Below, in pieces: positions 17,985-62,109 of a stretch of 64,000 nucleotides of DNA. The position numbers and the translations under genes were made by a program. The first letter of the stretch is position 1, and the number at the start of each line of letters is the position of its first letter. The notes beneath the pieces are model-generated. The model was given only the letters and a program-made list of their open reading frames with translations, made no database searches and was not told the origin of the DNA. The DNA comes from Octopus sinensis (Eukaryota), in the NCBI RefSeq assembly GCF_006345805.1, contig NC_043026.1, forward strand, positions 8,804,001-8,868,000, in the 5' to 3' direction.

Positions 17985-17991
17985 CATCATC

Positions 17992-18023
<32 letters not shown>

Positions 18024-21969: not shown

Positions 21970-22562
<593 letters not shown>

Positions 22563-34401: not shown

Positions 34402-35406
34402 TCAGTGGGATTGCTTCTTCCCCTTATGAACACATTTGTGAGAAGTTAAGCTGCTATGTTGAGTGAATGACCTACCACAGATATCACAAGGAAATAGCTT
34501 CTCTCCTGTATGGATACGTTTATGGGTCATTAGGTTACTACTGGTAGAGAAAGATTTATTACAGACATCACAAGAATATGGTGTCTCTCCTGTATGAATA
34601 CGTTTATGAGTAGTTAGGTGGCCACTTTGAGAGAATGATTTACCACAGATTTCACAGTGAAATGGTGTCTCTCCTGTATGAATACGTTTGTGTAAAGTCA
34701 AATAAATTTCTTCAGTGAATAATTTACCACAGATATCACAAGAATATGGTGTTTCTCCTGTATGAATACGTCTGTGTCCAGTTAAGTTAGAACTCACGGT
34801 GAATGATTTACCACAGATATCACAATGATAGTGTGACTCTCCTGTATGAATACGTTTATGATAAGTTAGAGCACTTTTACCAGGAAATAATTTACCACAG
34901 ATATTACAGGAATATGGCTTCTTTCCTGTATGAATAGGTTTGTGATTAGTTAAAGCACTTCTTTGAGAGAATGATTTACCACAAATATCACACTGAAATG
35001 ACTTCTCTCCTATATGAAGACGTTTATGATAAGTTAGAGCACTTTTACCAGGAAATAATTTACCACAGATATTACAGGAATATGGCTTCTTTCCTGTATG
35101 AATAGGTTTGTGTTTAGTTAAAGCACTTCTTTGAGAGAATGATTTACCACAGGTTTCACAGTGAAATGGCTTCTCTCCAGTATGAACACGTATGTGAGAA
35201 TTTAAATGATTTCGGTCAGAGAATGATTTACCACAGATTTCACAGTGAAATAGCTTCTCTCCTGTATGAATACGTTTGTGCTTATTTAAGTTACCTTTAC
35301 TTGAGAAAGACTTTTTACACACATCACAGTCATGTGACAATTTTTGTCTCTCTTTTTTGCTATCTTCTGGTAAAATCTGTTCCTTCACTTTCTCACTCTT
35401 TTCCAT
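34402..35406 (-). CDS. C2H2 zinc-finger protein A1 (11 fingers)
   Basis: 334-aa intact ORF, TGE(K/T)P linkers, C-terminus HKGKKQSH. Confidence 0.93.
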   Translation of the reverse strand: MEKSEKVKEQILPEDSKKERQKLSHDCDVCKKSFSSKGNLNKHKRIHTGEKLFHCEICGKSFSDRNHLNSHIRVHTGEKPFHCETCGKSFSQRSALTKHKPIHTGKKPYSCNICGKLFPGKSALTYHKRLHIGEKSFQCDICGKSFSQRSALTNHKPIHTGKKPYSCNICGKLFPGKSALTYHKRIHTGESHYHCDICGKSFTVSSNLTGHRRIHTGETPYSCDICGKLFTEEIYLTLHKRIHTGETPFHCEICGKSFSQSGHLTTHKRIHTGETPYSCDVCNKSFSTSSNLMTHKRIHTGEKLFPCDICGRSFTQHSSLTSHKCVHKGKKQSH

Positions 35407-35761
35407 TATTTTTCCTTCAACTTCACCATATACCTTCTTTTTTTATTCTTTTTGCTTCTGTAGTCTTTTGTTTACAAATATTTCAACTGTTGTATTTCTG
35501 GCCACTGTTACCTTTGTCACAAAACAACTAAATTTATCCACATTCAATCTGCAAACAGGCTCATCTTGTAGACACTCCAGCCAGTGATGTCCAGAAGGTT
35601 TGCTAATAACACAATTCAGAGTAAATATATCAGAGGAATTCCACCAAAGATTTATAGAAACAATCTTATATATATGTTCTGTACAATATTTTCATTTTGG
35701 TCTTTAAAAGATGATAAATAATGAGAATGTATCTTCAGTTATGCCAATGTCATCTGATATT

Positions 35762-38060
35762 CTGAAACAATAAAGAAACAACAATGTAAGATATAGAGGC
35801 TACTTAAAAAAATACAGATTCAACATTTCCATAAAGATAAACTCTAGAAACAAACATTTAACTGAACAACAGAACTTTCTAATTTATTAATATTGACATC
35901 ACAAAATCCTGTTTGAAGCTAACATATTTCTAAACTCCCGCTCCACATTCATAAATACACACACACACTTTTTTACTGGTTTCAGTTGTTTTCACTGTGG
36001 TCATGCTGGAGCACCAACTTTAAAGGCTTCAGTCAATAGAATCAATGCTAGGACTTATTTTTTGAGCTTAGCACTTATTCTATCAGCCACTTTTGCCAAA
36101 CCACAGGTTTATGGGGACATAAACACACCAACACTGTTTGTCAAGTGTTGAATAGGTGGGAGGACAACACACCCACCCACACACAAATATATTGGGCTTC
36201 CTTCAGCTTCCATCTCCCAAATCCATTCACAAGGCCAGAGGATATTGTAGAAAATGTATGTCTGTGACTAGTTACCTAACAGCTCACAATTTCTTCTCTT
36301 TAACTCCATAAAGGGAAAAAATTACTGGAAATAGTCATTACTCATTTTGCCCCATGAGGAGATTTCACGAATGATTACAAAATGTTTATCAGCTAAGCAA
36401 ATGGCCTTCCCTGAATGCATTGAAATCATTATAACAGAATCACTATTTCAGGAAATTATCATTGTTCTCTTTGAGTGTGTAGAAAGAGAAATTTGGCAGA
36501 GGCAAGAAAAGGTGAAATTGTCTCTTCAAATTATCCAGAATTACATTTGAAAACAAAGACTCAAACATCAATATCTATCCTTCGACATCTTAAAGATCAG
36601 AAATGCAAAAAGCTATTTAAGTATCGAATTCAAATGAAAGAGAATCAGAGAAAAATTGCAAATGATGTGAAATTAATGAATATCGAATAAATGGGGGGAA
36701 AAAAATCAACATAAAATATCATCAACAGTTTCTTCAAGATCTCTTCGTGGTTAGGGCAGCAGACTCGCGGTCGTAGGATTGCGGTTTCGATTCCCAGACC
36801 GGGCGTTGTGAGTGTTTATTGAGCGAAAACACCAAAAAGCTCCACGAGGCCCCGGCAGGGGATGGTGGTGATCCCTGCTGTACTCTTTCACCACAACTTT
36901 CTCTCACTCTTACTTCCTGTTCTGTTGTACCTGTATTTCAAAGGGCCGGCCTTGTCACTCTGTGTCACGCTGAATGTCCCCGAGAACTACGTTAAGGGTA
37001 CACGTGTTTGTGGAGTGCTCATCGTCGTAACCGACGGAGTGCTTCCATCCACTAACAAGAGATTATTGAAAGTAGTCATTACTCATTTTGCCCCATCTTA
37101 GTCATGATTTTGATAATTGAAAATTACCAAATTAGACACTAAACGGGGGGTAAAAATTGATCTGGAATCTAAGAGAGAGAAGAATATTGATGGTTAAACA
37201 CCGAACATCATCCAGATAATTTATTAGTAACCTCGATTATTATCGGATTGAGAGTTGAGGGAAAATTTCTTGATAATAAAAAGGACCTGCAACTCCAACA
37301 ACTATAAGGACAAATTCCCAGTCCTAAATATATATTTCTTTACTCACCACAAGGGGCTACACACTGAGGGGACAAACAAGGCCAGAAAAACGGATTAAGT
37401 CGATTATATCGACTCCGAAAGGATGAAAGGCAAAGTCGGCCTCGGCGGAATCTGAACTCAGAACGTAACGGCAGACGAAATATCTATTTTTTTACTGCCC
37501 ACAAGGGGCTAAACACAGAGGGGAGAAACAAGGACAGACATAGGTATTAAGTCGATTACATCGACCCCAGTGCGTAACTGGTACTTTATTTATCGACCCC
37601 GAAAGGATGAGAGGCAAAGTCGACCCCGGCGGAATTTGAACTCAGAACGTAACGGCAGACGAAATATGTCCACGCATTTCTGCCAGCTCGCCGCCATCCC
37701 CAGTCCTAAAATATAATGTAGCAATACTCACAAAAATCATAAATCCAAACAAATTAGGAGAAACGGGAAAATACTCATTTTGCCCCGCTTACTAATTATG
37801 TCCCTTACCTTATATCAAGAAACAAGGGTTCGATAAATTATAATAAAGCATTGGATTCTCAGCATTTCTGTGGTTGGAGTTTATTTTAAGAACATTTCTC
37901 CACCTAAAACACACAACAAACAAACTTAAAGAAGAAACGATGGAGCGTGTAGGAGGTTGCCGCCATAGCTAGAAATAGCAGCCAAATGTGGAACAGATCA
38001 AAGGACATCTGAGACACCAAAGTATTAAAAGATTAAATGTTTTCGTTGTTTAATACTTAC
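35762..38060 (-). other. Predicted 5'-UTR intron of A1 (also 47068-49354 for A2, 59436-61566 for A3)
   Basis: GTAAGT donor and polypyrimidine-TTTCAG acceptor at homologous positions. Confidence 0.55.
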
Positions 38061-38217
38061 GAAAATGTCTTTATAAAGGATGGTGTTGTTGTTAGATGTG
38101 CGTCAGGTGGTTGAGAAATCTATTACAAATGTGTTTCGGAGTTAATTGAGAGAAATTCTGGCACCAGACATCAAATGTTTGTCGTAACGTAATGAATGGG
38201 GGCGTACGTACGTTTCG

Positions 38218-39452
38218 TGCGCATGCGTATGAAATATTGGTTTCAAATTTTGGCACAACGCCAGCAATATCGGCGGAGGTGTTGGGGGGGGGCCTAAGTC
38301 GCTTACCTTGACCTCAGTAGACAACTAGTATTTATTTTATTGTGTCCCGCCCCAGCAAAGATATTAAAGGCAAAGTCGACCTCGTCGTAATTTACGCATA
38401 TATACATAAATATCGATGTAGGCACAACACGTGCACCCCACCGATGTCTGGGTGTTTTTTTTTTAGGGGGGGGGGGTCCCAAAAATGTTTTCGGATTCTG
38501 ATATCATCGATATAGAATACGATTTTGGCAAACTATCGCGTTTTCGTAGAACACCTATTTACTGTATCTGTAGAAAAAACGGCCGTTGAAGAAAATATCT
38601 TACAAATATCTTACAAATATCTTACAAACTACAGAATTTTCTCAATAAAGCCAAAAGGAAAAGGTGTTTTATGTAACACATTCTACCAGTATACGAAGTT
38701 TAAAATTTTTTAGTTACCTAGAAATTATGTTAAAAACTGCCGTTCAAACAGAAAAGATCCCCAATCTTTTTCTTAAACGAGGGACATATTCATACGGCAC
38801 AGAATGTTTTTTTTACCTCAATAGACGTGAGTGATTGGTTGAAATTGCCGAAATGCTTGAAATTAAAGACGAAATATCTTACAAACTACAGAATTTTCTC
38901 AATAAAGCCAAGAGGAAAAGATGTTTTATGTAACACATTCTACCAGTATACGAAGTTTAAAACTTTTTAGTTACCTAGAAATTATGTTAAAAACTGCCGT
39001 TCAAACAGAAAAGATCCCCAATCTGTTTCTTAAACAAGGGACATATTCATACGGCACAGAATGTTTTTTTACCTCAATAGACGTGAGTGATTGGTTGAAA
39101 TTGCCGAAATGCTTGAAATTAAAGACGAAATATCTTACAAACTACAGAATTTTCTCAATAAAGCCAACAGGAAAAGATGTTTTATGTAACACATTCTACC
39201 AGTATACGAAGTTTAAAACTTTTTAGTTACCTAGAAATTATGTTAAAAACTGCCGTTCAAACAGAAAAGATCCATTAAACTTTGCCTTTCACCTTTTTCT
39301 GCTAGGGTTCAATAAAATAAATACCAGTTGACTACTCGGGTCCATGAAATCGACTGACACTTGACCCTCCCCGAAATTTCTGGTTTTCTACCAAAATCTT
39401 TAAAAAACAAAAGAAAAAAAGAAGAAAAACCAGTATTTCATACGCATGCGCA
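38218..39452. promoter_or_regulatory. Putative bidirectional promoter core of A1/B1
   Basis: Mirror NRF1-like motifs at 38218-38227 and 39443-39452 end inverted arms (~37940-38235 vs ~39430-39715). Repeated at 49515/50737 and 61724. Confidence 0.55.
38617..39273. repeat. 256-bp satellite, ~2.6 copies
   Basis: Same monomer as 62110-64000; preceded by (atatcttacaa)x3. Confidence 0.9.
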
Positions 39453-39603
39453 CTAAGCGTATTTCCGCCTAAATTCCTTCATTTTAACAAACTTGATTTC
39501 AGTCGGAATTTCTCTCAATTCACTCCCAAACACATTTATAATACATTTCTCAACCACCTGACGCACTTCTAACAACAACACCATCCTTTTTAAAACCATT
39601 TCC

Positions 39604-40308
39604 GTAAGTATTAAACTATTTAATTTCTAAATACTTCGTGTCTCAGATGTCCTTTGATTTGTGCGACATTTGGCTGCTATTTCTAGCTATGGAGGCTACC
39701 TTCTACACTTTCCATCATTTTCCCACGTTTCTTGTGTTTTCACTGTGGATAAATGCCAGAAACGGCCTCAGACTCACCGATATCTTAAATCGTAAACAGA
39801 AGCAACCAGGGGCGAAGAATAGGGTTGAAAAAAAATCATAAATGTGTTTATGAAGAGAAAAACTTCAAAAGATGGGAAAGTGAAACGAGGAGGGTTGTCT
39901 TAGGATGTGCTAGAAACAACAGCCAAATCTCCCTTAAATCACACTTTTTCCTTTGAAAATATTTACAATATTTTATTTTTTTGTTACCGAAAAGGTTTCT
40001 CCCATCGTTTTTAAGGGCAAAAATATGTTTGTTTTTTTTTTTTCAAGTGAAAAGTGAAGGGGCTGGTGGTAAATATATATATATACACACACACACACAT
40101 ATGAATGTTGTGCAGTAAGAATGTGTAACTGGAATTTAGAAATATGTTAACTTCACACAAGATTTTCTGATGTAAATTTTAATAAATTAAAAAAGTTCTG
40201 TTGTTCAGGTAAATGTTTATTTCTAGAGTTTATCTTTATGGAAACGTTGAATCTGTATTTTTTTCAGTAGCCTCTATATCTTACACTGTTGTTTCTTTAT
40301 TATTTCAG
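39604..40308 (+). other. Predicted 5'-UTR intron of B1 (50898-52156 for B2)
   Basis: GTAAGT at 39604; ttctttattatttcAG ending at 40308. Confidence 0.55.
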
Positions 40309-40596
40309 AATATCAGATGACATTGGCATAACTGAAGATACATTCTCATTATTTATCATCTTTTAAAGACCAAAATGAAAATATTGTACAGAACAGATAT
40401 ATAAGATTGTTTCTACAAATCTGTGGTGGAATTCCTCTGATATATTTACTCTGAAATGTGTTATTAGCAAATCTTCTGGACATCACTGGCTGGAGTGTCT
40501 ACAAGATGTGTCTCTTTGCAAATTAAACTTGGGTAAATTTACTAACGAGTTTTGGGACAAAGGTAACAGTGGACAGAAATACAGCAGTCGAAATAC

Positions 40597-40631
40597 TTGC
40601 AAACAAAAGACTATAGAAGTACAAAGAAGAA

Positions 40632-40683
<52 letters not shown>

Positions 40684-42174
40684 GAGAAACTAAAGGATCT
40701 GACTTTTCCAGAAGAAAAAGGGAAACAAAAATTGTCACATGACTGTGATGTGTGTAAAAAGTCCTTCTCTGAAAAGGGTAACTTGTATAAGCACAAACGT
40801 ATTCATACGGTAGAGAAGCCATTTCATTGTGACAACTGTGGTAAATCATTCTCTCAAAAGGGTCGCTTGAATATGCACAAGCGTATTCATACAGGGGAGA
40901 AACCATTTCACTGTGACACCTGTGGTAAATCATTCTCTCAAAATAATAACTTGACTAAACACAAACGTATTCATACTGGAGAGAAGCCTTATCGTTGTGA
41001 TGTCTGTGGTAAATCATTCTCTGACCGAAGTGATTTAAATTCTCACAAGCGTATTCATACAGGAGAGACACCGTATTCTTGTGATATCTGTGGTAAATCA
41101 TTCACTCAAAGTGGGAACTTAGCTAAACACAAACGTTTCCATACAGGAGAGAAGCTATATCAGTGCAACATCTGTGGCAAATCTTTCTCTGCCAGTAGGA
41201 ACCTAACTACTCATAAACGTATTCATACAGGAGAGAAGCCATATCAGTGCAACATCTGTGGCAAATCTTTCTCTTCCTGTAGTAACATAACTAAACACAG
41301 ACGTATTCATACAGGAGAGACACCACATTCTTGTGACATCTGTGGTACATCATTCTCTCAAAGTGGGAGTTTAAATGCTCACAAACGTATTCATACAGGA
41401 GAGAAGCTGTATTACTGCGACATCTGTGGCAAATCTTTCTCTCTTAGTAGTAACCTAACTACACATAAGCGTATTCATACAGGAGAGAAGCCCTATCACT
41501 GTGATGTCTGTGGTACATCATTCTCTCAAAGTGGGAACTTAACTGCTCACAAACGTATTCATACAGGAGAGAAGCTGTATCAGTGCGACATCTGTGGCAA
41601 ATCTTTCTCTCTTAGTACGAACCTAACTAGACATAAGCGTATTCATACAGGAGAGAAGCCCTATCACTGTGATGTCTGTGGTACATCATTCTCTGTCCAA
41701 AGTGTTTTAAAATCTCACAAACATGATCATAGAGGAGAGAAGCCATTTCACTGTGATGTCTGTGGTAAATCATTCTTTCAAAAAGGTAACTTGACTACAC
41801 ACAAACGTATTCATACAGGGGAGAGACCATATTCTTGTGATATCTGTGGTAAATCATTCTCTGAAAGTGGCAGCCTAACTACTCATAAACGTATTCATAC
41901 AGGAGAGACACCATATCACTGTGATATCTGTGGTAAATCATTCTCTGACCAAAGTGCTTCCATTTCTCACAAACGTATTCATACAGGAGAGACACCATAT
42001 TCTTGTGATATCTGTGGTAGGTCATTCACTCAACATGGCAGCTTAACTTCTCACAAACGTATCCATACAGGAGAGAAGCCATATCCTTGTGATATCTGTG
42101 GAAGGTCATTCACTCAACGTGGCAACTTAACTTCTCACAAACGTGTTCATCAGGGGAAGAAGCAATCCCACTGA
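40597..42174 (+). CDS. C2H2 zinc-finger gene B1 (17 fingers); family start ATG deleted
   Basis: Open frame with 17 fingers. The track start is a TTG; the MEKSG ATG of the paralogs is missing next to the (TA)n; the first in-frame ATG is inside finger 2. Confidence 0.8.
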
Positions 42175-44413
42175 TATTTGTGCTAAATCATAATCTGTAA
42201 GGGGTGACTGAACCCTTTACCATGCAGATTATTCTGTCGAATGTGAGGGTTATTTATTCACATAATTTTCAATTTGTCCTGCATTAACCCACAGCTTTCA
42301 AATTTTGATGATATGATTGTGTATTTTCACAATGACATTGTAGGGTAGGTGTAAGAAGCCAACTCTGACTACTTTGATCATAAAATAGGCAGAATATTTG
42401 GGCCAGATATGGCTGGTTTAAATTCTAAAGAGTGGACAGTAGATGTACCAACACTTCTTACTTCTCACAAGGACCATAAGGGGCCATTATTGACTGCCAT
42501 TGAAAATATTTCATCATCATCATTTAACGTCCGTTTTCCATGCTAGCATGGGTTGGACGGTTCAACTGGGGTCTGGGAAGCCCGAAGGCTGCACCAGGTT
42601 GTCTGATCTGGCAGTGTTTCTACAGCTGGATGCCCTTCCTAATGCCAACCACTCCATGAGTGTAGTGGGTGCTTTTTACGTGCCACCTGCACAGGTGCCA
42701 GACGAGGCTGGCAAATGGCCACGATCGGATATTTTAAATACAGTCCTGCCCTGTCTCACTGTAGCATTGCTCTCCGCTAGTCCTGACCTGTATGTTCCAC
42801 CCCCATTCCCTGTCTTACTGTATTATTGCTACTGGCTTGCCCTCAACCTATGTCTTCCACCCACATGTAACAAGAAAACTTTTTACACACCCTGCCCCCA
42901 ACAAACCAATCTACATCTCTTCTTCACATTCCTTCCATACACTATGCCTACCTCTCACTCCCCCAATCCTGTCCTCATGGTGCTGTTCCTCTGTATCATT
43001 GCTATCCGGTAGCCCCCTGACCCTATATAATACCCAGGTTGTCATCACTCAACACACCCTACACTCTAATCATGCTTCCTTTGCAGTATCCTATTCCTTT
43101 ACTCCCCACAAGGGGCTAAACACAGAGGGGACAAACGGATTAAGTCGATTACATCGACCCCAGTGCATAACTGGTACTTATTTAATGGACCTCGGCGGAA
43201 TTTGAACTCAGAGCCCAACGGCAGGCGAAATACCGCCTTTGCAGTATCCTGTCCCTTATATTATGACGTTTAAACCCCAAGGTTGTGCCCTGGCACTTGC
43301 CACCATCTATATCTCTTTCTTCCTTTACTCAAGGATCCCCATTTATGTTCTGATCCCCTCCCTAGTGAATACGCCCATCATTTAGCCACTATATCCATCG
43401 TGTTGTCTCCCACCCTCTATCACCTTCTCCTGCTTTTCCCTCGGGCTGGGTAACCATGTATCTCCTTTGTGGCGGCACACCCGTTTCTGTCTTCATCCTG
43501 ATCTCTCTCTCTGGCCTGGTAAACTTGTACTTCCTCTACAGCAACGGACAGATCTCAACAACAGATGCTGCCCAACAAACAGAACCAAGCCATGAAGATG
43601 CTACAGAATTTCAACTGTGATACAACTCCCACTGTTCCAGATAGAGTTTGTTAAAACTTGCCAAACCTGTTACTTCACAATTTGTAAGAAATTTGCCATG
43701 TATTTTTATAAAGAGTTGTAATAAATAATAGTTGCCTTCAATTTACCTGGTTCTTCTTGTCATTCTTTTATATAAAGGTAACTCCAGGCACACAAACTAG
43801 ACCAGCCACAGTTAACTCGCCAGCAAAACTCATAACCAATGCTACAGAATTTCAACTGTGATACAACTTCCACTATTCCAGATCGAGTTTGTTAAAATTT
43901 CTGACGGTTCAACTGGGGTCTGGGAAACCAGAAGGCTGCACTAGGCCCAGTCTGATCTGACAAAGTTTCTACAGCTGGATGCCCTTCCTAATGCCAACCA
44001 CTCCGTTAGTGTAGTGGTTGCTTTCACGTGCCACTGGCACGGAGGCCAAACGATGCTGGCAACAGCTACAATCGGATGGTGCTTTTTACGTGCAACCTGC
44101 ACGGAGGACAGACGGGCTGCGCTGGCAGCGGCCACGTTCAGATGGTTCCTTTGTGTGTGTATATGTATATATACTACTCGTAGTAATACCTGTCATTAAT
44201 TGGGTAATTGCTTTTATTCTTTCTTGAGAGCCCCATTCAAAGTATTATTATATGTATAGTTTACCCCTCCTGTATGTGTGTATTTTATAAGAGAAAAATG
44301 AAATAACTGAAGTAGGAAAAAGACCAGTTTCATACACAGGCTTCTGTTTTATTTATCAAAACACTAATGGCAATTATATACTCCTTACTCTTTTACTTGT
44401 TTCAGTCATTGAC

Positions 44414-45706: not shown

Positions 45707-46711
45707 TTAGTGGGATTGCTTCTTCCCCTTATGAACACATTTGTGAGAAGTTAAGCTGCTATGTTGAGTAAATGACCTTCCACAGATATCACAAGAATAT
45801 GGTGTCTCTCCTGTATGAATACGTTTATGGGTCATTAGGTTACTACTGGTAGAGAAAGATTTATTACAGACATCACAAGAATATGGTGTCTCTCCTGTAT
45901 GAATACGTTTATGTTTAGCTAAGTTGCCACTTTGAGAGAATGATTTACCACAGATTTCACAGTGAAATAGTGTCTCTCCTGTATGAATACGTTTGTGTAA
46001 AGTCAAATAAATATTTTGAGAGAATAATTTACCACAGATATCACAAGAATATGGTGTTTCTCCTGTATGAATACGTCTGTGTCCAGTTAAGTTAGAACTC
46101 ATGGTGAATGATTTACCACAGATATCACAAGGATATGGTGACTCTCCTGTATGAATACGTTTATGATAAGTTAGAGCACTTTTACCAGGAAATAATTTAC
46201 CACAGATATTACAGGAATATGGCTTCTTTCCTGTATGAATACGCTTGTGATTAGTTAAAGCACTTCTATGAGAGAATGATTTACCACAGATGTCACATTG
46301 AAATGGCTTCTCTCCTGTATGACAATGCTGGTGATTATTTAAAACACTTTGGTCAGAGAATCTTGTACCACAGACACTACAATGATATGGTGACTCTCCT
46401 GTATGAATACGTTTATGTTGAGTTAGAGCACTGTTATCAGAAAATAATTTGCCACAGATATTACAGGAATATGGCTTCTCTCCTGTATGAATACGTTTAT
46501 GTTTAGCTAAGCTGCCACTTTGAGAGAATGATTTACCACAGATTTCACAGTGAAATGGCTTCTCTCCTGTATGAATACGTTTGTGACTATTTAAGTTACA
46601 TTTACTTGAGAAAGACTTTTTACACACATCACAGTCATGTGACAATTTTTGTCTCTCTTTTTTGCTAACTTCTGGTAAAATCTGTTCCTTCACTTTCTCA
46701 CTCTTTTCCAT
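45707..46711 (-). CDS. C2H2 zinc-finger protein A2 (11 fingers)
   Basis: 334-aa intact ORF. Confidence 0.93.
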   Translation of the reverse strand: MEKSEKVKEQILPEVSKKERQKLSHDCDVCKKSFSSKCNLNSHKRIHTGEKPFHCEICGKSFSQSGSLAKHKRIHTGEKPYSCNICGKLFSDNSALTQHKRIHTGESPYHCSVCGTRFSDQSVLNNHQHCHTGEKPFQCDICGKSFSHRSALTNHKRIHTGKKPYSCNICGKLFPGKSALTYHKRIHTGESPYPCDICGKSFTMSSNLTGHRRIHTGETPYSCDICGKLFSQNIYLTLHKRIHTGETLFHCEICGKSFSQSGNLAKHKRIHTGETPYSCDVCNKSFSTSSNLMTHKRIHTGETPYSCDICGRSFTQHSSLTSHKCVHKGKKQSH

Positions 46712-49700: not shown

Positions 49701-49914
49701 ATACATAAATATCGATGTAGGCACAACACGTGCACCCCACCGATGTCTGGGGTTTTTTTTTTGGGGGGGGGGTCCAAAAAATGTTTTCGGATTCTGATAT
49801 CATCGATATAGAATACGATTTTGCCAAAATATCGCGTTTTCGTAGAACACCTATTTACTGTATCTGTAGAAAAAACGGCCGTTGAAGAAAATATCTTACA
49901 AATATCTTACAAAC

Positions 49915-50568
49915 ATGTTACAAACTACAGAATTTTCTCAATAAAGCCAACAGGAAAAGATGTTTTATGTAACACATTCTACCAGTATACGAAGTTTAAA
50001 ACTTTTTAGTTACCTAGAAATTATGTTAAAAACTGCCGTTCAAACAGAAAAGATCCCCAATCTGTTTCTTAAACAAGGGACATATTCATACGGCACAGAA
50101 TGTTTTTTTACCTCAATAGACGTGAGTGATTGGTTGAAATTGCCGAAATGCTTGAAATTAAAGACGAAATATCTTACAAACTACACAATTTTCTCAATAA
50201 AGCCAAGAGGAAAATATGTTTTATGTAACACATTCTACCAGTATACGAAGTTTAAAACTTTTTAGTTACCTAGAAATTATGTTAAAAACTGCCGTTCAAA
50301 CAGAAAAGATCCCCAATCTGTTTCTTAAACAAGGGACATATTCATACGGCACAGAATGTTTTTTTACCTCAATAGACGTGAGTGATTGGTTGAAATTGCC
50401 GAAATGCTTGAAATTAAAGACGAAATATCTTACAAACTACACAATTTTCTCAATGAAGCCAACAGGAAAAGATGTTTTATGTAACACATTCTACCAGTAT
50501 ACGAAGTTTAAAACTTTTTAGTTACCTAGAAATTATGTTAAAAACTGCCGTTCAAACAGAAAAGATCC
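49915..50568. repeat. 256-bp satellite, ~2.6 copies
   Basis: ORF-track period 49960 to 50216 = 256. Confidence 0.9.
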
Positions 50569-51892
50569 ATAAACTTTGCCTTTCACTTTTTTCTGCTGGG
50601 GTTCAATAAAATAAATACCAGTTGACTACTCGGGTCCATGAAATCGACTGACACTTGACCCTCCCCGAAATTTCTGGTTTTCTACCAAAATCTTTAAAAA
50701 ACAAAAGAAAAAAAGAAGAAAAACCAGTTTTTCATACGCATGCGCACTAAGCGTATTTCCGCCTCCATTCATTCATTTTAACAAACTTGATTCAAGTCGG
50801 AATTTCTCTCAATTCACTCCCAAACACATTTATAATACATTTCTCAACCACCTGACGCACTTCTAACAACAACACCATCCTTTATAAAGACATTTCCGTA
50901 AGTATTAAACTATTTAATTTCTAAATACTTCCTGTCTCAGATGTCCTTTGATTTGTGCGACATTTGGCTGCTATTTCTAGCTATGGAGGCTACCTTCTAC
51001 ACTTTCCATCATTTTCCCACGTTTCTTGTGTTTTCACTGTGGATAAATGCCAGAAACGGCCTCAGACTCACCGATATTTTAAATCGTAAACAGAAGCAAC
51101 CAGGGGCGAAGAATAGGGTTGAAAAAAAATCATAAATGTGTTTATGAAGAGAAAAACTTCAAAAGATGGGAAAGTGAAACGAGGAGGGTTGTCTTAGGAC
51201 GTGCTAGAAACAACAGCCAAATCTCCCTTAAATCACACTTTTTCCTTTGAAAATATTTACAATATTTTATTTTTTTGTTACCGAAAAGGTTTCTCCCATC
51301 GTTTTTAAGGGCAAAAATATGTTTGTTTTTTTTTTTTTTTCATTTTCGTTTTCTACATAGTTACGGACAAAACCCTTTGTAACTTTCGTCCTGTGTTTTG
51401 TCCCTTTATGTTTTAATTGATTTTTGTTAGCCCTTGTGGCCAATAAACGAACGAATTATTATTATTATTATTATTTTGTTGTCTTTGAACGACGATAATT
51501 TCCTGAAACAGTGATTCTGTTATAATGGTTTCAATGCATTTAGGGAAGGCCATTTGCTTAGCTGATGTACTTTTTGTAGGCATTTAAACAAGAGGTCTAT
51601 AAGTCCCCTATTCATCAAGCAAAGTATAAACTCAACCACATTTCAAACTTCACTTTCATAAATTTCACAATATCATCATCATCATCGTTTAGCATCCGTT
51701 TTCCATGCTAGCATGGGTTGGACGGTTCAACCGGGGTCTGGGAAGCCAGAAGGCTGCACCAGGCCCAGTCTGATCTGGCAAAGTTTCTACGGCTGGATGC
51801 CTTTCCTAACGCCAACCACTCCGTGAGTGTAGTGGGTGCTTTTTACGTGTCAGACGAGTCTGGCGACCGGCCATGCTCGGATGGTGCTTTTT

Positions 51893-51946
<54 letters not shown>

Positions 51947-52519: not shown

Positions 52520-54021
52520 ATGGAAAAGAGTGGGAAACTAAAGGATTTGACTTTTCCAGGAGAAAAAGGGAAACAAAAATTGTCACATGACTGTGATGTG
52601 TGTAAAAAGTCCTTCTCTGAAAAGGGTAACTTGAATAAGCATAAACGTATTCATACGTTAGAGAAGCCATTTCATTGTGACATCTGTGGTAAATCATTCT
52701 CTCAAAAGGGTCGCTTAAATATGCACAAGCGTATTCATACAGGGGAGAAACCATTTCACTGTGAGATCTGTGGTAAATCATTCTCTCAAAAGGTTCACTT
52801 CAATATGCACAAGCGTGTTCATACAGAAGAGAAGCCATATCAGTGTAACATTTGTGGTAGACCATTCTCTCAGAAAAAGACTTGACTACACACAAACATA
52901 TTCATACAGGAGAGAAACCGTACTCCTGTAATATCTGTGGTTATTCATTCTCTCACAGGAGTTCTTTAACTTCTCACAAACGAATTCATACAGGTGAGAT
53001 CCCATGTTCCTGTGACGTCTGCGGTAAATCATTCTCTCGCAACAGTGCTCTTGCTTCTCACAATCGTACACATACAGGAGAGAAACCATATTCTTGTAAT
53101 ATCTGTGGTAAATCATTCTCTCGCAATAGTGCTTTAACTTCTCATAAACGTATTCATACAGGAGAGAAGCCATATCAGTGCAGCATCTGTGGCAAATCTT
53201 TCTCTCTTAGTAGGAACCTAACTTCTCATAAATATATTCATACAGGAGAGACACCATATTCTTGTGATATCTGTGGTAAATCATTCACTCATAGTGGGAA
53301 CTTAACTGCTCACAAACGTTTCCATACAGGAGAGAAGCCATATCAGTGCAACATCTGTGGCAAATCTTTCTCTGCCAGTAGGAACCTAACTACTCATAAA
53401 TATATTCATACAGGAGAGACACCATATTCTTGTGATATCTGTGGTAAATCATTCACTCAAATTGGGAACTTAACTGCTCACAAAAATATTCATACAGGAG
53501 AGAAGCTGTATCACTGCGACATCTGTGGCAAATCTTTCTCTCTTAGTAGGAACCTAACTATACATAAGCGTATTCATACAGGAGAGAAGCCATATCAGTG
53601 CAACATCTGTGGCAAATCTTTCTCTCTTAGTAGGAACCTAACTATACATAAGCGTATTCATACAGGAGAGAAGCCATATCAGTGCAACATCTGTGGCAAA
53701 TCTTTCTCTCTTAGTAGGAACCTAACTACACATAAGCGTATTCATACAGGAGAGAAGCCCTATCACTGTGATATCTGTGGTAAATCATTCTCTCAAAATG
53801 GGTGTTTAACTGCTCACAAACGTATTCATACAGGAGAGAAGCCATATCAGTGCAACATCTGTGGCAAATCTTTCTCTGTCAGTAGTACCCTAACTACTCA
53901 TAAACGTATTCATACAGGAGAGACACCATATTCTTGTGATATCTGTGGAAGGTCATTCACTCAACATGGCAGCTTAACTTCTCACAAACGTGTTCATCAG
54001 GGGAAGAAGCAATCCCACTGA
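52520..54021 (+). pseudogene. C2H2 zinc-finger gene B2 (17 fingers) with a 1-nt frameshift in finger 4
   Basis: ATG at 52520 ([12 protein letters not shown]); cagaaaaagacttgact is one A short of continuing the frame; 13 intact fingers follow. Could be a homopolymer error. Confidence 0.8.
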
Positions 54022-54430: not shown

Positions 54431-54882
54431 GTCATTATCATCATTGTTCGACCGTGGTCGAGACAATGGAATTTACCATGCTACGCCAGACTTCACGGTC
54501 CATCATGGCATTACGGAGGTCCTGTTGCTGGATGCCTGTATCCCTGGAGATTACATCAGGGTAGGAGAGTGTGCGCCCTCTGGTATCGCGAGCAGATGGC
54601 TTCCAGAGGAGAAGAGCAGAAATTGCCTTATTTTCAGCTCTACAACAATATCCAGCCAACTGGACTCTCCTACCTTTCACAAGAGATGACACAGGTAGTA
54701 GTTTCCCATTTATTTGTACTTTGGTTGGATGACGCTTCCACGAGAGATTTTGAGTTCTCATAAGGAGGCGAGTGTAGGTTCCATCCAACCGCCTCTCAAG
54801 CTTCTTTGATAACGTCCAGGTTTCTGAGCCATAGAGTAGAATTGGTTAGTCTCTGCTTAGATTTGATGACCAGATGCCAGGC
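54431..54882 (-). mobile_element. 5'-truncated RTE-clade LINE inserted in an RTE-tailed SINE
   Basis: DGTYTRLLMRTQNLSWKRHPT...RRVQLAGYCCRA...RGRTLSYPDVISRDTG...DREVWR* with an atgatgataatgac tail; absent at the homologous site ~42580. Confidence 0.8.
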
Positions 54883-57800
54883 CGTCTGATCTGGCAGTGT
54901 TTCTACAGCTGGATGCCCTTCCTAATGCCAACCACTCTGTGAGTGTAGTGGGTGCTTTTTATGTGCCACCTGCACAGGTGCCAGACGAGGCTGGCAAACG
55001 GCCACGATCGGATATTTTAAATACAGTCCTGCCCTGTCTCACTGTAGCATTGCGCTTTGCTATTCCTGACCTGTATGTTCCACCCCCATTCCCTGTCTTA
55101 CTATATTATTGCTATTGGCTTGCCCTCAACTTATGTCTTCCACCCACATGTAACAAGAAAACTTTTTACACACCCTACCCCCAACAAACCAATCTACATC
55201 TCTTCTTCACATTCCTTCCATACACTATGCCTACCTCTCACTCCCCCAATCCTGTCCTCATGGTGCTGTTCATCTGTATCATTGCTATCCGGTAGCCCCC
55301 TGACCCTATATAATACCCAGGTTGTCATCACTCAACACACCCTACACTCTAATCATGCTTCCTTTGCAGTATCCTATTCCTTTACTACCCACAAGGGGCT
55401 ACACACAGAGAGGAGACAAACAAGGACAGATAAAGGGATTAAGTTGATTACATCGACACCAGTGCGTAACTGGTACTTATTTAATCGACCCCGAAAGGAT
55501 GAAAAGCAAAGTCGACCTCGGCGGAATTTGAACACAGAGCCTAACTTTTCTGCCAGCTCGCCGCCTATGCAGTATCCTGTCCCTTATATTATGACGTTTG
55601 AACATCAAGGGTATGCCCTGGCACTTGCCACCATCTATATCTCCCTCTTCCTTTACTCAACCATCCTCATCTATGCTCTAATCCCCTCCCTAGTGAATAC
55701 GCCCATCATTTTGCCACAATGTCCATCGTGTTGTCTCCCACCCTTATCTCCTCCTGCATTTCCCTCAGGCTGGGTAACCATGTATCTCCTTTGTGGCGGC
55801 ACACCCTTTCCTGATCTCTCTCTCTCTCTGGCCTGGTATACTTGTACTTCCTCTACAGCAACAGACAGATCACAACAAAAGATGCTGCCCAACACACAGA
55901 ACCAAGCCATGAACATGCTACAGAATTTCAACTGTGATACAACTTCCACTGTTCCAGATAGAGTTACTTAAAACTTGCCAAACCTGTTACTTCACCATTT
56001 GTAAGACATTTGCCATGTATTTTTATAAGGGGTTGTAATAAATAACAGTTGCTTTGAATTTACCTGGTTCTTCTTGTCATTCTTTTGTATTCGGTAACTC
56101 CAGGCAGACAGAATAGACCAGTGAATGCATAACCAACACACAGCTACATCAAGATGAACCAGCCACAGTTAACTCGCAAGCAAAACTCATAACCAATGCT
56201 ACGGAATTTCAACTGTGATACAACTTCCACTGTTCCAGATAGAGTTCATTAAAATTTGTGATGGTTCAACTGGGGTCTGGGAAACCAGAAGGCTGCACCA
56301 GGCCCAGTCTGATCTGACAAAGTTTCTACGGCTGGATGCCCTTCCTAATGCCAACCACTCCGTTAGTGTAGTGGTTGCTTTCACGTGCCACTGGCACGGA
56401 GGCCAAAGGATGCTGGAAACAGCTACGATCGGATGGTGCTTTTTACGTGCAACCTGCATGGAGGACAGTCGGGCTGCGCTGGCAGCGGCCACATTCGGAT
56501 GGTTCCTTTGTGTGTGTATATGTATATATACTACTCGTAGTAATACCTGTCATTAATTGGGTAATTGCTTTTATTCTTTCTTGAGAGCCCCATTCAGAGT
56601 ATTATTATATGTATAGTTTACCCCTCCTGTATGTGTGTATTTTATAAGAGAAAAATGAAATAACTGAAGTAGGAAAAAGACCAGTTTCATACACAGGCTT
56701 CTGTTTTATTTATCAGAACACTAATGGCAATTATATACTCTTTACTCTTTTACTTGTTTCAGTCAGTGACTTTGAGTAAGTCCTCAACACCACCGTCTTC
56801 CTTTCAAGCTCTTTTAACCATTTTTTGGGAGCTGTCAAGTCCCACACAAGAAATTCCTTTGCCATTTCAACACAAAGTTCAATTACAGTTCAAAATGTAA
56901 GAAAATAAAACAAGACACAAAAAAAGAAGGGAAGAAATAAAATAAAAAATAACAGTTCAAAAAAGAGTTCTTTTATTTTTTTAAATAAACGAAAGCTTTG
57001 AAGAAGAGAGTTCAAATCCAGGCAAAGAAATAAATTAATTTTCGGCCGAAAAGGTACTCCTGGCCAAATGTACATAGGTTCCTTGGTATGAATCGTCTTT
57101 ACCCGTAATTGGTAAAAGAAATCCAAACGCAATACTGGCTACAGCCAACGGTAACTGTAACAGGTTCTAATCATTCGGGTGAGGATACGTCCCTCCACTG
57201 TTTTTGTTTTTTTTATGAATCCAAAATATTCCCACTAAATTCACAAAACAGCAGCCACCGAGAGCAGGCGAAATTTGTTAACAAAGAATAACAATATAAC
57301 AAATTACACCCAGCTCAGATAAAACAAAATCACTGGCCTCGACAACCTTCTCTGTTTTTGTTCTTTTTTCTTGTAATTGGCCAGAGCCAAAACACTCACG
57401 TCCACCTTGCAAAAACAGTCCTTCCTGCCTCGGTACTCCTTGGTAATCCACAGACACGAAGATAATTTTCGCAAAGAAATTAATTTTTGCGGAGGGGCTA
57501 TGCCTCCTCGAAAACACAATTCTCACTGCAAAGTGAGTCTTTATAGGCGGCCACAGGCAGGCAAATGTCTGGAGCAGATTGGAGTCTATTACTCACCAAA
57601 AAATATTAAATACAGGGCAACAAACTCCACTAAAGCCTCAAAATATACGACAAACGCCTACCTGTAGTCGAGCCTCAAAGTTCAATATTTCACGACGAAA
57701 GACGTGACATCAAGCAGCAAGAACTCTCTGCCAAAAACAAACACGTCCGTCTCCGACAAAGGTAAGCAAGCTACTTACCACACAACTACTCCTGTTTACT

Positions 57801-58074
57801 CAATTTGAAAACTCTTTGTATTGTCTTTTGTCTCCTGTGTCTGTGTGTGTGCGCCTAAGTTCATATATGAGTAGTGTCCCTTTAATATCACGCAAAAATT
57901 GATAAAAATTTGAGAATTAAAATTAAATATCTTTTTTCTAATTGATAGAATTTTACTAAACCTTTGGATGGCAAATTGAAAATAATGTGAATATATAAAC
58001 ATCGCATTCGACAGAATAACGTACATGGTAAAGGGTTTCAGTAACCCCTTAGAGATTATGATTTAGTTTAAATA

Positions 58075-59079
58075 TTAGTGGGATTGCTTCTTCCCCTTAT
58101 GAACACATTTGTGAGAAGTTAAGCTGCTATGTTGAGTAAATGACCTTCCACAGATATCACAAGAATATGGTGTCTCTCCTGTATGAATACGTTTATGGGT
58201 CATTAGGTTACTACTGGTAGAGAAAGATTTATTACAGACATCACAAGAATATGGTGTCTCTCCTGTATGAATACGTTTATGTTTAGCTAAGTTGCCACTT
58301 TGAGAGAATGATTTACCACAGATTTCACAGTGAAATAGTGTCTCTCCTGTATGAATACGTTTGTGTAAAGTCAAATAAATATTTTGAGAGAATAATTTAC
58401 CACAGATATCACAAGAATATGGTGTTTCTCCTGTATGAATACGTCTGTGTCCAGTTAAGTTAGAACTCATGGTGAATGATTTACCACAGATATCACAAGG
58501 ATATGGTGACTCTCCTGTATGAATACGTTTATGATAAGTTAGAGCACTTTTACCAGGAAATAATTTACCACAGATATTACAGGAATATGGCTTCTTTCCT
58601 GTATGAATACGCTTGTGATTAGTTAAAGCACTTCTATGAGAGAATGATTTACCACAGATGTCACATTGAAATGGCTTCTCTCCTGTATGACAATGCTGGT
58701 GATTATTTAAAACACTTTGGTCAGAGAATCTTGTACCACAGACACTACAATGATATGGTGACTCTCCTGTATGAATACGTTTATGTTGAGTTAGAGCACT
58801 GTTATCAGAAAATAATTTGCCACAGATATTACAGGAATATGGCTTCTCTCCTGTATGAATACGTTTATGTTTAGCTAAGCTGCCACTTTGAGAGAATGAT
58901 TTACCACAGATTTCACAGTGAAATGGCTTCTCTCCTGTATGAATACGTTTGTGACTATTTAAGTTACATTTACTTGAGAAAGACTTTTTACACACATCAC
59001 AGTCATGTGACAATTTTTGTCTCTCTTTTTTGCTAACTTCTGGTAAAATCTGTTCCTTCACTTTCTCACTCTTTTCCAT
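58075..59079 (-). CDS. C2H2 zinc-finger protein A3 (11 fingers; translation identical to A2)
   Basis: 334-aa intact ORF. Confidence 0.93.
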   Translation of the reverse strand: MEKSEKVKEQILPEVSKKERQKLSHDCDVCKKSFSSKCNLNSHKRIHTGEKPFHCEICGKSFSQSGSLAKHKRIHTGEKPYSCNICGKLFSDNSALTQHKRIHTGESPYHCSVCGTRFSDQSVLNNHQHCHTGEKPFQCDICGKSFSHRSALTNHKRIHTGKKPYSCNICGKLFPGKSALTYHKRIHTGESPYPCDICGKSFTMSSNLTGHRRIHTGETPYSCDICGKLFSQNIYLTLHKRIHTGETLFHCEICGKSFSQSGNLAKHKRIHTGETPYSCDVCNKSFSTSSNLMTHKRIHTGETPYSCDICGRSFTQHSSLTSHKCVHKGKKQSH

Positions 59080-62000: not shown

Positions 62001-62109
62001 TTCTGATATCATCGATATAGAATACGATTTTGCCAAAATATCGCGTTTTCGTAGAACACCTATTTACTGTATCTGTAGAAAAAACGGCCGTTGAAGAAAA
62101 TATCTTACA

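What the first reader, a model, noticed from the sequence alone, without database searches (positions are those of the whole stretch)
34402..59079. Recognition helices diversify while flanks stay near-identical (PRDM9/KZFP-like behaviour)
A1 vs A2 helices (-1 to +6): F1 SKGNLNK/SKCNLNS, F2 DRNHLNS/QSGSLAK, F3 QRSALTK/DNSALTQ, F4 GKSALTY/DQSVLNN, F5 QRSALTN/HRSALTN, F8 EEIYLTL/QNIYLTL, F9 [14 protein letters not shown]; F6, F10 and F11 are unchanged. B1 and B2 share fingers 1, 2 and a QHGSLTS finger near the end, but internal arrays differ despite both having 17 fingers. Surrounding non-coding DNA differs only by scattered substitutions. This suggests rapid specificity change, possibly an arms race with repeats (inference).
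Basis: partly seen in the sequence, partly recalled or inferred. Interest (0 to 1): 0.72.

Follow-up and report, generated by a model that had tools for sequence, protein, structure and literature searches.

The report
Octopus zinc-finger genes swap fingers
This is a young tandem cluster of octopus zinc-finger genes whose DNA-reading helices differ mostly because finger-coding segments were copied over one another inside each gene, which is an ordinary way for such genes to evolve and does not prove an arms race.

Summary
The coding regions differ at 99 of 1005 nt, against 2.5% in the flanks. However, 68 of those 99 differences sit in one 234-nt block (fingers 2-4), where synonymous and framework sites are as diverged as the helices (dS 0.42, against 0.07 in the rest of the gene).

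Two recent in-register copying events inside the genes explain much of that block. In A1, 132 nt of F3-F4 match F5-F6 at 131/132. In A2, 80 nt of F2 match F9 at 79/80.

B1 and B2 differ by gain, loss and duplication of whole fingers. B1 has lost its ATG, and B2 carries a 1-bp frameshift in finger 4. The youngest copies (A2, A3 and a third copy in Octopus sinensis) are identical.

Outside the swapped fingers the structural core is under purifying selection (omega about 0.1-0.2). Contact residues change at or somewhat above the synonymous rate (omega 1.3-2.4), and whether that excess is significant depends on the test. No KRAB, SET or other effector domain is present.

Helix turnover is therefore real and resembles KZFP/PRDM9 evolution in mode, but it is driven mainly by recombination. 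The arms race with repeats is untested. I file this as a new member of a known kind.

The parts
29524..42593 (.). Tandem unit U1 (holds A1 and B1, arranged head to head)
   Evidence: Self-BLAST collinear blocks to U2 and U3 at 94-98% identity
42594..54876 (.). Tandem unit U2 (holds A2 and B2)
   Evidence: Collinear with U1 at 94-98% and with U3 at 98.8%
54877..64000 (.). Tandem unit U3 (holds A3; runs off the window inside the 256-bp repeat)
   Evidence: Region 43801-48784 matches 56158-61153 at 98.8%
34402..35406 (-). A1: 334-aa protein with 11 C2H2 fingers and a 24-aa N-terminal leader; no other domain
   Evidence: ORF, finger map, Pfam finds C2H2 families only
34984..35217 (-). Divergent block of A1 relative to A2 (gene nt 190-423, from the F2 helix to the start of F5): 68 of the 99 differences
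   Evidence: For the three whole fingers F2-F4, dS is 0.42 and dN is 0.29
35020..35151 (-). A1 recipient tract (F3 nt 16 to F4 nt 63), overwritten by the F5-F6 sequence
   Evidence: 131/132 identical to 34852-34983, but 36/132 different from the positional A2 sequence
34852..34983 (-). A1 donor tract (F5 nt 16 to F6 nt 63)
   Evidence: The A1-specific Pro codon (HKPIH) is shared by F3 and F5
45707..46711 (-). A2: 334 aa, 11 fingers
   Evidence: The exact protein is on record in O. sinensis GCA_006345805.1
46477..46556 (-). A2 F2 tract that matches A2 F9 (QSGSLAK / QSGNLAK)
   Evidence: 79/80 identical to 45889-45968; the same spans in A1 differ at 15/80
45889..45968 (-). A2 F9 partner of the F2 tract
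58075..59079 (-). A3: identical to A2 at all 1005 nt
   Evidence: Flanks between U2 and U3 differ at 14/2680
40738..42174 (+). B1 array: 17 intact fingers plus the stop codon
40634..40680 (+). (TA)n run in B1 that replaces the ATG and the first codons present in B2, C, A1 and A2
   Evidence: Alignment, sequence, translation. The same state is seen in the O. sinensis copy B1''
52520..54021 (+). B2: ATG, F1-F3, a frameshifted F4, then 13 intact fingers in another frame
52838..52920 (+). B2 finger 4: 83 bp instead of 84 (1 bp missing, in the part of the helix-coding stretch that holds an A5 run). Gives a premature stop at 52883-52885
22563..23477 (-). C: an older paralogue with 10 fingers and a stop codon, followed by decayed fingers down to 21957
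   Evidence: The 5' flank is homologous to those of A and B
38615..39273 (.). 256-bp tandem repeat between A1 and B1 (2.6 copies). Also at 49911-50568 (2.6 copies) and 62109-64000 (at least 7.4 copies)

Best explanation
The region is a young tandem segmental duplication, with units of about 11.3-12.4 kb and at least three units in the window. It belongs to a lineage-specific octopus cluster of poly-C2H2 zinc-finger genes that have no effector domain. Each unit holds an 11-finger gene (A) and a 17-finger gene (B), arranged head to head. The source is Octopus sinensis or a very close relative.

The finger arrays are 84-bp coding repeats. They are remodelled by in-register, non-allelic recombination between fingers: gene conversion or synthesis-dependent repair within one array, and unequal exchange that adds or removes whole fingers.

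Shown:
- In the A1 lineage, F5-F6 overwrote F3-F4.
- In the A2 lineage, F2 and F9 exchanged sequence.
- B1 and B2 differ by indels and duplications of whole fingers.
- The zinc-binding and hydrophobic core is under purifying selection.

Inferred from the established C2H2 recognition rule (residues -1, 2, 3 and 6 of each helix read about 3 bp): each such event replaces several recognition helices at once, so it changes about 9 bp of the predicted target in a single step.

A smaller number of single substitutions fall preferentially on contact residues, at about or somewhat above the neutral rate.

The cluster is turning over by birth and death. The youngest copies are identical. B1 has lost its start codon. 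B2 is frameshifted. C is truncated. A1 is collecting non-canonical linkers.
For: (1) 68 of the 99 A1/A2 differences lie in gene nt 190-423. The maximum in 20,000 permutations was 43. In F2-F4, dS is 0.42, against 0.07 in the rest of the gene and 0.025 in the flanks (Fisher p = 3e-13 against the flanks).

(2) The A1 tract 35020-35151 is 131/132 identical to 34852-34983, the stretch 168 bp away in the same gene. It is 36/132 different from its positional counterpart in A2. The A2 tract 46477-46556 is 79/80 identical to 45889-45968. Non-positional finger pairs average 60.5 +/- 5.5 of 84 nt; these pairs score 76-81.

(3) Polarity: the unusual Pro codon (HKPIH) is found in A1-F3 and A1-F5 but not in A2-F5 or other fingers. 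The copying therefore happened in the A1 lineage after the duplication.

(4) B1 and B2: only F1, F2 and the last finger are positional orthologues. B2 F12-F14 are 80-82/84 identical to one another. The B arrays show 168-bp and 252-bp periodicity. B2-F17 carries the helix of B1-F16 but matches B1-F17 best overall, at 81/84.

(5) C compared with an O. vulgaris C-like gene: 10 fingers against 6, with the shared fingers 79-84/84 identical.

(6) The youngest copies do not differ. A2 = A3 = the O. sinensis copy A2' (0/1005). B1 = B1' (0/1437). B1'' has one change.

(7) Selection: for the core framework, pN/pS is 0.10 in A1/A2 (p = 5e-4) and 0.17 pooled over 19 positional finger pairs (p = 1e-5). For contact sites it is 1.27-1.5, not significant.

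(8) Outside the block there are five multi-nucleotide codon changes, against 1.18 expected (p = 0.003).

(9) Finger gain, loss and conversion is a documented mode of evolution for KZFP clusters and PRDM9 (PMC5363842, PMC2779102).
Against: - No orthologous outgroup could be obtained, so the ancestral states of F2-F4 are inferred only from internal paralogy.
- The helices of A1-F2 (DRNHLNS) and A2-F4 (DQSVLNN) have no close donor in the window (best 70-71/84).
- The first 15 nt of A1-F3 are not explained by the 132-nt tract.
- Helix changes in F1, F5, F7, F8 and F9 have no in-register donor in the window.
- Contact-site change exceeds the flank rate (p = 2e-4). In a finger-paralogue spanning-tree analysis it also exceeds pooled synonymous change (pN/pS 1.9-2.4, p = 1e-3 to 1e-6). 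A real substitution-driven, possibly selected component therefore exists.
- The lesions in B1 and B2 could be assembly errors, since one lies in a (TA)n run and the other in a stretch that holds an A5 run.
- A second O. sinensis locus, or a second assembly of this one, shows a different unit order. Copy number and unit order are therefore not settled.
Confidence: 0.78

Rival explanations
1. One reading: positive selection on point substitutions at DNA-contacting residues, driven by an arms race with transposable elements, is the main cause of the helix differences.
For: - In the eight A fingers outside the swapped block, 7/32 contact residues differ against 12/192 other residues (p = 0.009).
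- Contact pN is 0.109 against a flank divergence of 0.025 (p = 2e-4).
- The finger-paralogue spanning-tree analysis gives contact pN/pS of 1.9-2.4 against pooled synonymous sites (p = 1e-3 to 1e-6). Positions -1, +3 and +6 are the highest.
- A2-F3 and A2-F6 differ at 6 nt, all within nt 21-54, and 5 of them are nonsynonymous.
- Octopus ZNF motifs were predicted to match TE consensus sequences (PMC10547256).
- Seven copies of a SINE-like element lie in the window, two of them just 3' of B1 and B2.
Against: - Two thirds of the A1/A2 differences lie in a block where synonymous sites are equally diverged, and the block contains demonstrable copy tracts.
- Against synonymous sites, contact change is not significant in positional pairs (pN/pS 1.27-1.5, p = 0.2-0.5). 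It is only marginal against local synonymous sites (p = 0.06-0.2).
- Conversion between fingers changes helices preferentially without any selection, because fingers differ mainly in their helices.
- These values are far below the 10-14 reported for PRDM9 positions -1, 3 and 6 (PMC2779102).
- The youngest duplicates show no helix change.
- No binding data and no effector domain are available. The cephalopod arms race is described as an open question (PMC12513265).
Confidence: 0.2
2. Relaxed constraint or decay: these are redundant copies drifting towards pseudogenes, and the helix differences are neutral.
For: - B1 lacks the family's ATG.
- B2 has a frameshift and a stop codon in F4.
- C is truncated, with decayed fingers downstream.
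- In A1/A2, linker pN/pS is about 0.9-1.05.
- Almost all non-canonical framework states are in A1 (GEKL twice, GESH, HIGEKS, HKPIH twice), against one in A2 (GETL).
- Contact pN/pS cannot be distinguished from 1 in positional pairs.
Against: - The core framework is strongly constrained (pN/pS 0.07-0.17, p = 1e-3 to 1e-5).
- All 11 fingers of A1, A2 and A3 and all 17 fingers of B1 keep the C2H2 pattern and an open reading frame.
- The A2 coding sequence shows 0/1005 differences between copies whose flanks differ by 0.5%. About 5 differences would be expected (my Poisson estimate gives P about 0.006; counts).
- The 13 fingers after the B2 frameshift are all intact, so the lesion is either very recent or an error.
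Confidence: 0.2
3. Assembly artefact: chimeric or duplicated assembly of a repetitive locus produced the apparent copies and mosaics.
For: - U2 and U3 differ by only about 0.5%, which is of the order one might expect between haplotypes. That comparison is my own judgement and was not tested.
- The O. sinensis locus L001 has the order B1''-A2'-B1' instead of B1-A2-B2, at 99.3-99.5% identity.
- Both lesions lie in low-complexity sequence: one in a (TA)n run, the other in a stretch that holds an A5 run.
Against: - A1 and A2 differ throughout their units by 1.7-5%, and each has its own insertions. They are therefore distinct loci.
- The copy tracts are in frame, 80-132 nt long, and lie inside 1-kb arrays that single long reads would span.
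- The same A2 and B1 sequences recur independently in the public O. sinensis assembly.
Confidence: 0.05

Closest known systems
Octopus- and coleoid-specific C2H2 zinc-finger gene expansions (PMC12513265; clusters on O. sinensis chromosomes, PMC9795677)
   Same: - These are multi-finger C2H2 genes in tandem clusters in an octopus genome.
- The A2 protein is encoded exactly on O. sinensis CM016888.1.
- A C-like paralogue exists in O. vulgaris.
   Different: Those papers treat phylogeny, timing and expression of the family. They do not describe finger-level conversion between tandem duplicates, and they state that the TE arms race is an open question. Expression of these particular genes was not examined here.
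Mammalian KRAB zinc-finger protein (KZFP) clusters
   Same: - Tandem segmental duplication and birth-and-death turnover with pseudogenes.
- Duplication, deletion and reshuffling of finger units between close paralogues (PMC5363842).
- Contact residues are the most variable positions.
   Different: - No KRAB domain or any other effector domain; the leader is only 24-26 aa.
- A protostome lineage, so an independent expansion.
- Silencing of TEs has not been shown.
PRDM9 zinc-finger array
   Same: - The array sits in a single exon.
- It changes by non-allelic gene conversion or intra-exon duplication between fingers.
- Finger number is variable (PMC2779102).
   Different: - No PR/SET, KRAB or SSXRD domain.
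- The fingers are not homogenised: 75% matches by TRF and 72% mean pairwise identity, whereas PRDM9 has many identical fingers.
- Contact omega is 1.3-2.4, against 10-14 for PRDM9.
Cyprinid FiNZ-ZNF genes (PMC10547256)
   Same: A large lineage-specific poly-ZF family outside the KZFPs, proposed to track TEs, with contact residues among the most variable positions.
   Different: - FiNZ genes have a conserved N-terminal FiNZ domain; these genes have only a short leader.
- FiNZ genes show significant positive selection in several clades and have knock-down evidence. None of that exists here.

Membership tests
Poly-C2H2 (Krueppel-type) zinc-finger proteins | Tandem C-x2-C-x12-H-x3-H fingers joined by TGEKP-like linkers | tested here: met
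   11 fingers (A), 17 (B1) and 10 (C) with an 84-bp period. Pfam zf-C2H2 and zf-H2C2_2 score E = 1e-53 to 1e-145
Octopus lineage-specific C2H2 expansion | Encoded in tandem clusters in an octopus genome | tested here: met
   The A2 protein is on O. sinensis CM016888.1, and L001 is 99.3-99.5% identical to the window. There are three tandem units plus the older paralogue C
Octopus lineage-specific C2H2 expansion | Expression in neural or embryonic tissue, as reported for the family | not testable with these tools
   No transcript data were available. The literature covers the family as a whole only (PMC12513265)
KRAB-ZFP (KZFP) | N-terminal KRAB domain (PF01352) that recruits TRIM28 | tested here: not met
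   Pfam lists only zinc-finger-type matches for A1, A2, B1 and C, none of them KRAB, SCAN, BTB or SET. The 5.2-kb A-B intergenic region has only short ORFs; their domains were not searched
KRAB-ZFP (KZFP) | Binding to and repression of transposable elements | not testable with these tools
   This needs ChIP, DAP-seq or SELEX and perturbation experiments
PRDM9 | PR/SET methyltransferase domain together with KRAB and SSXRD | tested here: not met
   No such Pfam hits
PRDM9 | Minisatellite-like array of near-identical fingers that differ mainly at positions -1, 3 and 6 | tested here: not met
   TRF gives 75-79% matches. Mean non-positional finger identity is 60.5/84. Only local runs are highly similar (B2 F12-F14, 80-82/84), and they differ in the framework as well as the helix
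PRDM9 / KZFP-like evolutionary mode | dN/dS significantly above 1 at contact residues | tested here: inconclusive
   Positional pairs give 1.27-1.5 (p = 0.2-0.5). The finger-paralogue spanning tree gives 1.9-2.4 against pooled pS (p = 1e-3 to 1e-6), but 1.4-2.3 against local pS (p = 0.06-0.2). The result is confounded by conversion
PRDM9 / KZFP-like evolutionary mode | Array change by non-allelic conversion or unequal exchange between fingers | tested here: met
   Copy tracts of 132 nt (131/132) and 80 nt (79/80); whole-finger indels in B and C
FiNZ-ZNF | Conserved FiNZ N-terminal domain; restricted to cyprinid fish | not tested
   No FiNZ profile was available. The leader is only 24-26 aa and the host is an octopus, so membership is implausible

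The most novel reading that the evidence does not exclude
In this reading, an octopus poly-zinc-finger family with no effector domain uses in-register copying of finger 'cassettes' within its arrays to generate new DNA specificities. Real diversifying selection then acts on the contact residues as the proteins track a fast-evolving repeat family, for example the SINE-like element that sits next to the B genes. This would be an independent protostome counterpart of the KZFP/PRDM9 Red-Queen dynamic, working without KRAB or SET domains.
Probability: 0.15. Interest if true: 0.6.

Novelty: new member of a known kind. Interest (0 to 1): 0.3.

Why it matters
Whether the very large octopus C2H2 expansion is shaped by conflict with transposons is explicitly an open question (PMC12513265). 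This locus gives a clean, datable example of how octopus finger arrays actually change between duplicates that are 0.5-5% diverged. The main route is recombination between fingers that swaps several helices at once, on a selectively maintained structural core.

It also carries a methodological warning. Pairwise dN/dS or helix comparisons between such paralogues will mimic 'helix-specific diversification' unless finger shuffling is modelled first.

The locus itself is an ordinary member of a known class.

Tried and rejected
- **Orthologue search.** A full-length A1 query was swamped by vertebrate ZNFs. The only octopus hit was a C-like O. vulgaris protein at 57% identity. A query with the N-terminal leader returned nothing. 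Exact look-ups of A1, A2 and C in the protein collection, and of A1 and C among gene calls, found nothing.
- **The O. vulgaris locus of that hit (L002).** It is not syntenic with the window and sits among transposon ORFs. It served only for a comparison at the level of single fingers.
- **PRDM9-type homogenised minisatellite.** Rejected: 75% matches within the arrays.
- **KRAB, SCAN, BTB or SET effector.** Rejected by Pfam. The A-B intergenic region has only short ORFs, and their domains were not searched.
- **Donors inside the window for the single helix substitutions.** None were found for F1, F5 (the A2 allele), F7, F8 and F9, so those are not explained by local conversion.
- **Structured RNAs.** No Rfam match anywhere in the window.
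- **Neighbouring ORFs** (32887-33642, 12008-12589, 29683-30366). No Pfam family.
- **Albertin et al. 2015.** Not held in the library.
- **The third protein search and the representative-library search.** Not used. The first search showed that no close A orthologue is indexed.

Full report
**What is in the window.** A self-comparison shows a tandem segmental duplication with three units: U1 at about 29.5-42.6 kb, U2 at 42.6-54.9 kb, and U3 from 54.9 kb to the end of the window. The units are collinear at 94-98% (U1 against U2) and 98.8% (U2 against U3). Each unit carries a minus-strand gene with 11 C2H2 fingers: A1 at 34402-35406, A2 at 45707-46711 and A3 at 58075-59079. U1 and U2 also carry, head to head about 5 kb away, a plus-strand gene with 17 finger units: the B1 array at 40738-42174, and B2 at 52520-54021. 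U3 runs off the window before the place where its B gene would lie. An older paralogue, C, lies upstream at 22563-23477 (minus strand). It shares the 5' flank and the short N-terminal leader. Pfam finds only C2H2-type families in A1, A2, B1 and C. No KRAB, SCAN, BTB or SET domain is present.

**Source organism.** The exact A2 protein is encoded on Octopus sinensis chromosome record CM016888.1 (locus L001). That locus is 99.3-99.5% identical to the window, but its unit order is B1''-A2'-B1'. It is therefore either a further part of the same array or a structural variant or different assembly of it. C2H2 clusters and tandem duplication are already described for O. sinensis chromosomes (PMC9795677).

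**Checking the observation.** A1 and A2 differ at 99/1005 coding positions, while 2674 aligned flank positions differ at 66 (2.5%). For B1 and B2, the first two fingers and the last one are positional orthologues (81-82/84 nt), the internal arrays are not collinear, and the flanks differ by 1.6-3.5%.

- A3 is identical to A2 at all 1005 nt.
- F7 also differs, at position -1.
- B2's fourth unit is 83 bp long, which shifts the frame and gives a stop at 52883-52885.
- B1 has a (TA)n run where the other four genes have the ATG and first codons. The O. sinensis copy B1'' shows the same state.

**The differences are a block, not scattered helix substitutions.** A sliding comparison gives 19-28 mismatches per 100 bp across 34981-35280, against 0-6 per 100 bp in nearly all of the rest of the 3.8-kb alignment, including the rest of the gene; only its first window, at the far end of the 3' flank, reaches 10. 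Sixty-eight of the 99 differences lie in gene nt 190-423. No permutation out of 20,000 exceeded 43.

In fingers 2-4, synonymous divergence is 0.42 and non-helix framework dN is 0.20. In the rest of the gene dS is 0.07. The synonymous excess in the block is significant against both the flanks (p = 3e-13) and the rest of the gene (p = 3e-5). Positive selection on contact codons cannot raise synonymous and framework divergence in this way. Replacement by paralogous sequence can.

**The replacements can be identified.** At the DNA level, A1-F3 is closest to A1-F5 (79/84) and A1-F4 is closest to F6 (78/84). A2-F2 is closest to A2-F9 (81/84) and A2-F3 to A2-F6 (78/84). The positional A1/A2 pairs for F2-F4 score only 65, 63 and 59. 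Non-positional pairs in general average 60.5 +/- 5.5.
- In A1, a continuous 132-nt stretch (35020-35151, from F3 nt 16 to F4 nt 63) is 131/132 identical to the stretch 168 bp downstream in the same gene (34852-34983).
- In A2, an 80-nt stretch (46477-46556) is 79/80 identical to the F9 region (45889-45968). The same spans in A1 differ at 15/80.
- The rare Pro codon in HKPIH is shared by A1-F3 and A1-F5 and is absent from A2-F5. This places the A1 event after the A1/A2 split.

So each lineage had at least one in-register copying event inside the gene after the duplication. These events account for the changed helices of F2 (in A2) and of F3 and F4 (in A1). The helix states QSGNLAK and QSGSLAK in A2-F9 and A2-F2 belong to the same exchange.

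Some residual mosaicism is not resolved. The first 15 nt of A1-F3 are unexplained, and the helices of A1-F2 and A2-F4 have no close partner in the window.

**B and C tell the same story at coarser grain.** The B arrays are built from alternating finger types (168-bp and 252-bp periodicity). B2 has six units where B1 has two. B1 has five units where B2 has two. B2 F12-F14 are 80-82/84 identical to one another. B2's last finger carries the helix of B1-F16 (QHGSLTS) but matches B1-F17 best overall, at 81/84. The equal count of 17 units is a coincidence. C has 10 fingers and an O. vulgaris C-like gene has 6. The shared fingers are 79-84/84 identical, and only one shared helix has changed.

**Selection after shuffled fingers are removed.**

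A1 against A2, outside F2-F4:

| Site class | pN | Comparison |
|---|---|---|
| Core framework | 0.007 | about 0.1 of pS; p = 5e-4 to 8e-4 |
| Linkers | 0.066 | about equal to pS |
| Contact residues | 0.109 | against pS 0.067-0.073: ratio 1.5-1.8, p = 0.2-0.45 |
| Contact residues | 0.109 | against flank divergence 0.025: p = 2e-4 |

- Synonymous sites outside the block are themselves higher than the flanks (p = 0.006).
- Multi-nucleotide codon changes are over-represented outside the block (5 against 1.18 expected, p = 0.003). This suggests micro-conversion or clustered mutation.
- Pooling 19 positional finger pairs from A, B and C gives contact pN/pS of 1.27 (p = 0.47) and core pN/pS of 0.17 (p = 1e-5).
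- A broader analysis ran along minimum spanning trees of all fingers within 12, 8 or 6 nt of each other. It gives contact pN/pS of 1.9-2.4 against pooled synonymous sites (p = 1e-6 to 1e-3). Against synonymous sites of the same codons the ratio is 1.4-2.3 (p = 0.06-0.2). Positions -1, +3 and +6 are the highest.

That analysis is confounded by partial conversion, which homogenises frameworks and leaves helices different.

My reading is as follows. The fold is clearly under purifying selection, so at least the A genes have been functional. Contact residues evolve at or moderately above the neutral rate. Diversifying selection is plausible but not demonstrated, and it is far weaker than the values of 10-14 reported for PRDM9 (PMC2779102).

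**Turnover.** The youngest copies show no change. A2, A3 and A2' are identical. B1 equals B1', and B1'' has one framework change. Between U2 and U3 the flanks differ at 14/2680, so about five coding differences would be expected and none is seen (counts; the expectation is my own estimate). This fits constraint or very recent homogenisation.

Other signs of turnover:
- B1 has lost its start codon.
- B2 is frameshifted.
- C is truncated, with decayed fingers beyond its stop codon.
- A1 holds nearly all the non-canonical linker and framework states (GEKL twice, GESH, HIGEKS, HKPIH twice), against one in A2.

The cluster therefore looks like birth-and-death evolution. The lesions in B1 and B2 need read-level confirmation, because both lie in low-complexity sequence.

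**Comparison with known systems.** In behaviour this matches what is described for KZFP clusters: duplication, deletion and repetition of finger triplets between neighbouring paralogues, with many pseudogenes (PMC5363842). It also matches PRDM9, where non-allelic conversion between fingers is documented (PMC2779102).

In membership it is neither. It has no KRAB or SET domain. The arrays are not homogenised (75% matches). The host is a mollusc. It belongs to the octopus-specific C2H2 expansion (PMC12513265, PMC9795677).

For octopus ZNFs, TE targeting has so far only been predicted computationally (PMC10547256), and the arms race is called an open question (PMC12513265).

**Verdict.** Helix turnover between near-identical units is real. 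Its main cause is recombination between finger repeats, which is shown here. A smaller substitution component is concentrated at contact residues, and its selective nature is unresolved. The arms race with repeats remains an untested inference. This is a new member of a known kind and of modest interest.

Noticed in passing
window 14115, 18779, 20443, 26198, 42535, 51700, 54382: A SINE-like element (core TTTCCATGCTAGCATGGGTTGGACGGTTCAAC) occurs seven times, against none expected by chance. Copies lie directly 3' of B1 and of B2. One copy lies in a 582-bp insertion (51338-51919) upstream of B2 that is absent upstream of B1, so it was inserted after the duplication.
   Followed up: partly
window 38615-39273, 49911-50568, 62109-64000: A 256-bp tandem repeat sits between the head-to-head A and B genes. 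It has 2.6 copies in U1 and U2 but at least 7.4 copies in U3, where it runs off the window. Its copy number has therefore changed between units that are 99.5% identical.
   Followed up: partly
window 26334-27744 (related: 13816-14007, 20014-20339): A GC-rich 63-bp tandem repeat has 22 copies at 91% matches, next to a copy of the SINE-like element. It produces long spurious ORFs in several frames.
   Followed up: no
window 17985-18765: A (CAT)n-like microsatellite of about 260 units reads as a His-rich ORF. It is probably not coding.
   Followed up: no
window 21957-23477 (-) and L002 10001-10579: Gene C ends at a stop codon after finger 10, and recognisable but broken fingers continue downstream. 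An O. vulgaris C-like gene at a non-syntenic, transposon-rich locus has the same stop codon but only 6 fingers.
   Followed up: partly
window 32117-33782: About 1.7 kb of extra DNA is present in U1 but absent from U2 and U3. It contains a 251-aa ORF (32887-33642, minus strand) with no Pfam match. It may be a mobile-element fragment.
   Followed up: partly
L001 (O. sinensis CM016888.1, 8887673-8908677): The public O. sinensis record has the unit order B1''-A2'-B1', with the A2 and B1 arrays identical or nearly identical to those in the window. No B2-type gene follows A2 there. The array either has more units than the window shows or is structurally polymorphic or assembled differently.
   Followed up: partly
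window 34402-35406 (A1): A1 carries most of the departures from the canonical finger and linker motif: TGEKL twice, TGESH, HIGEKS, and a proline between the two zinc-binding histidines in F3 and F5. This suggests that A1 is under weaker constraint than A2 and A3.
   Followed up: partly
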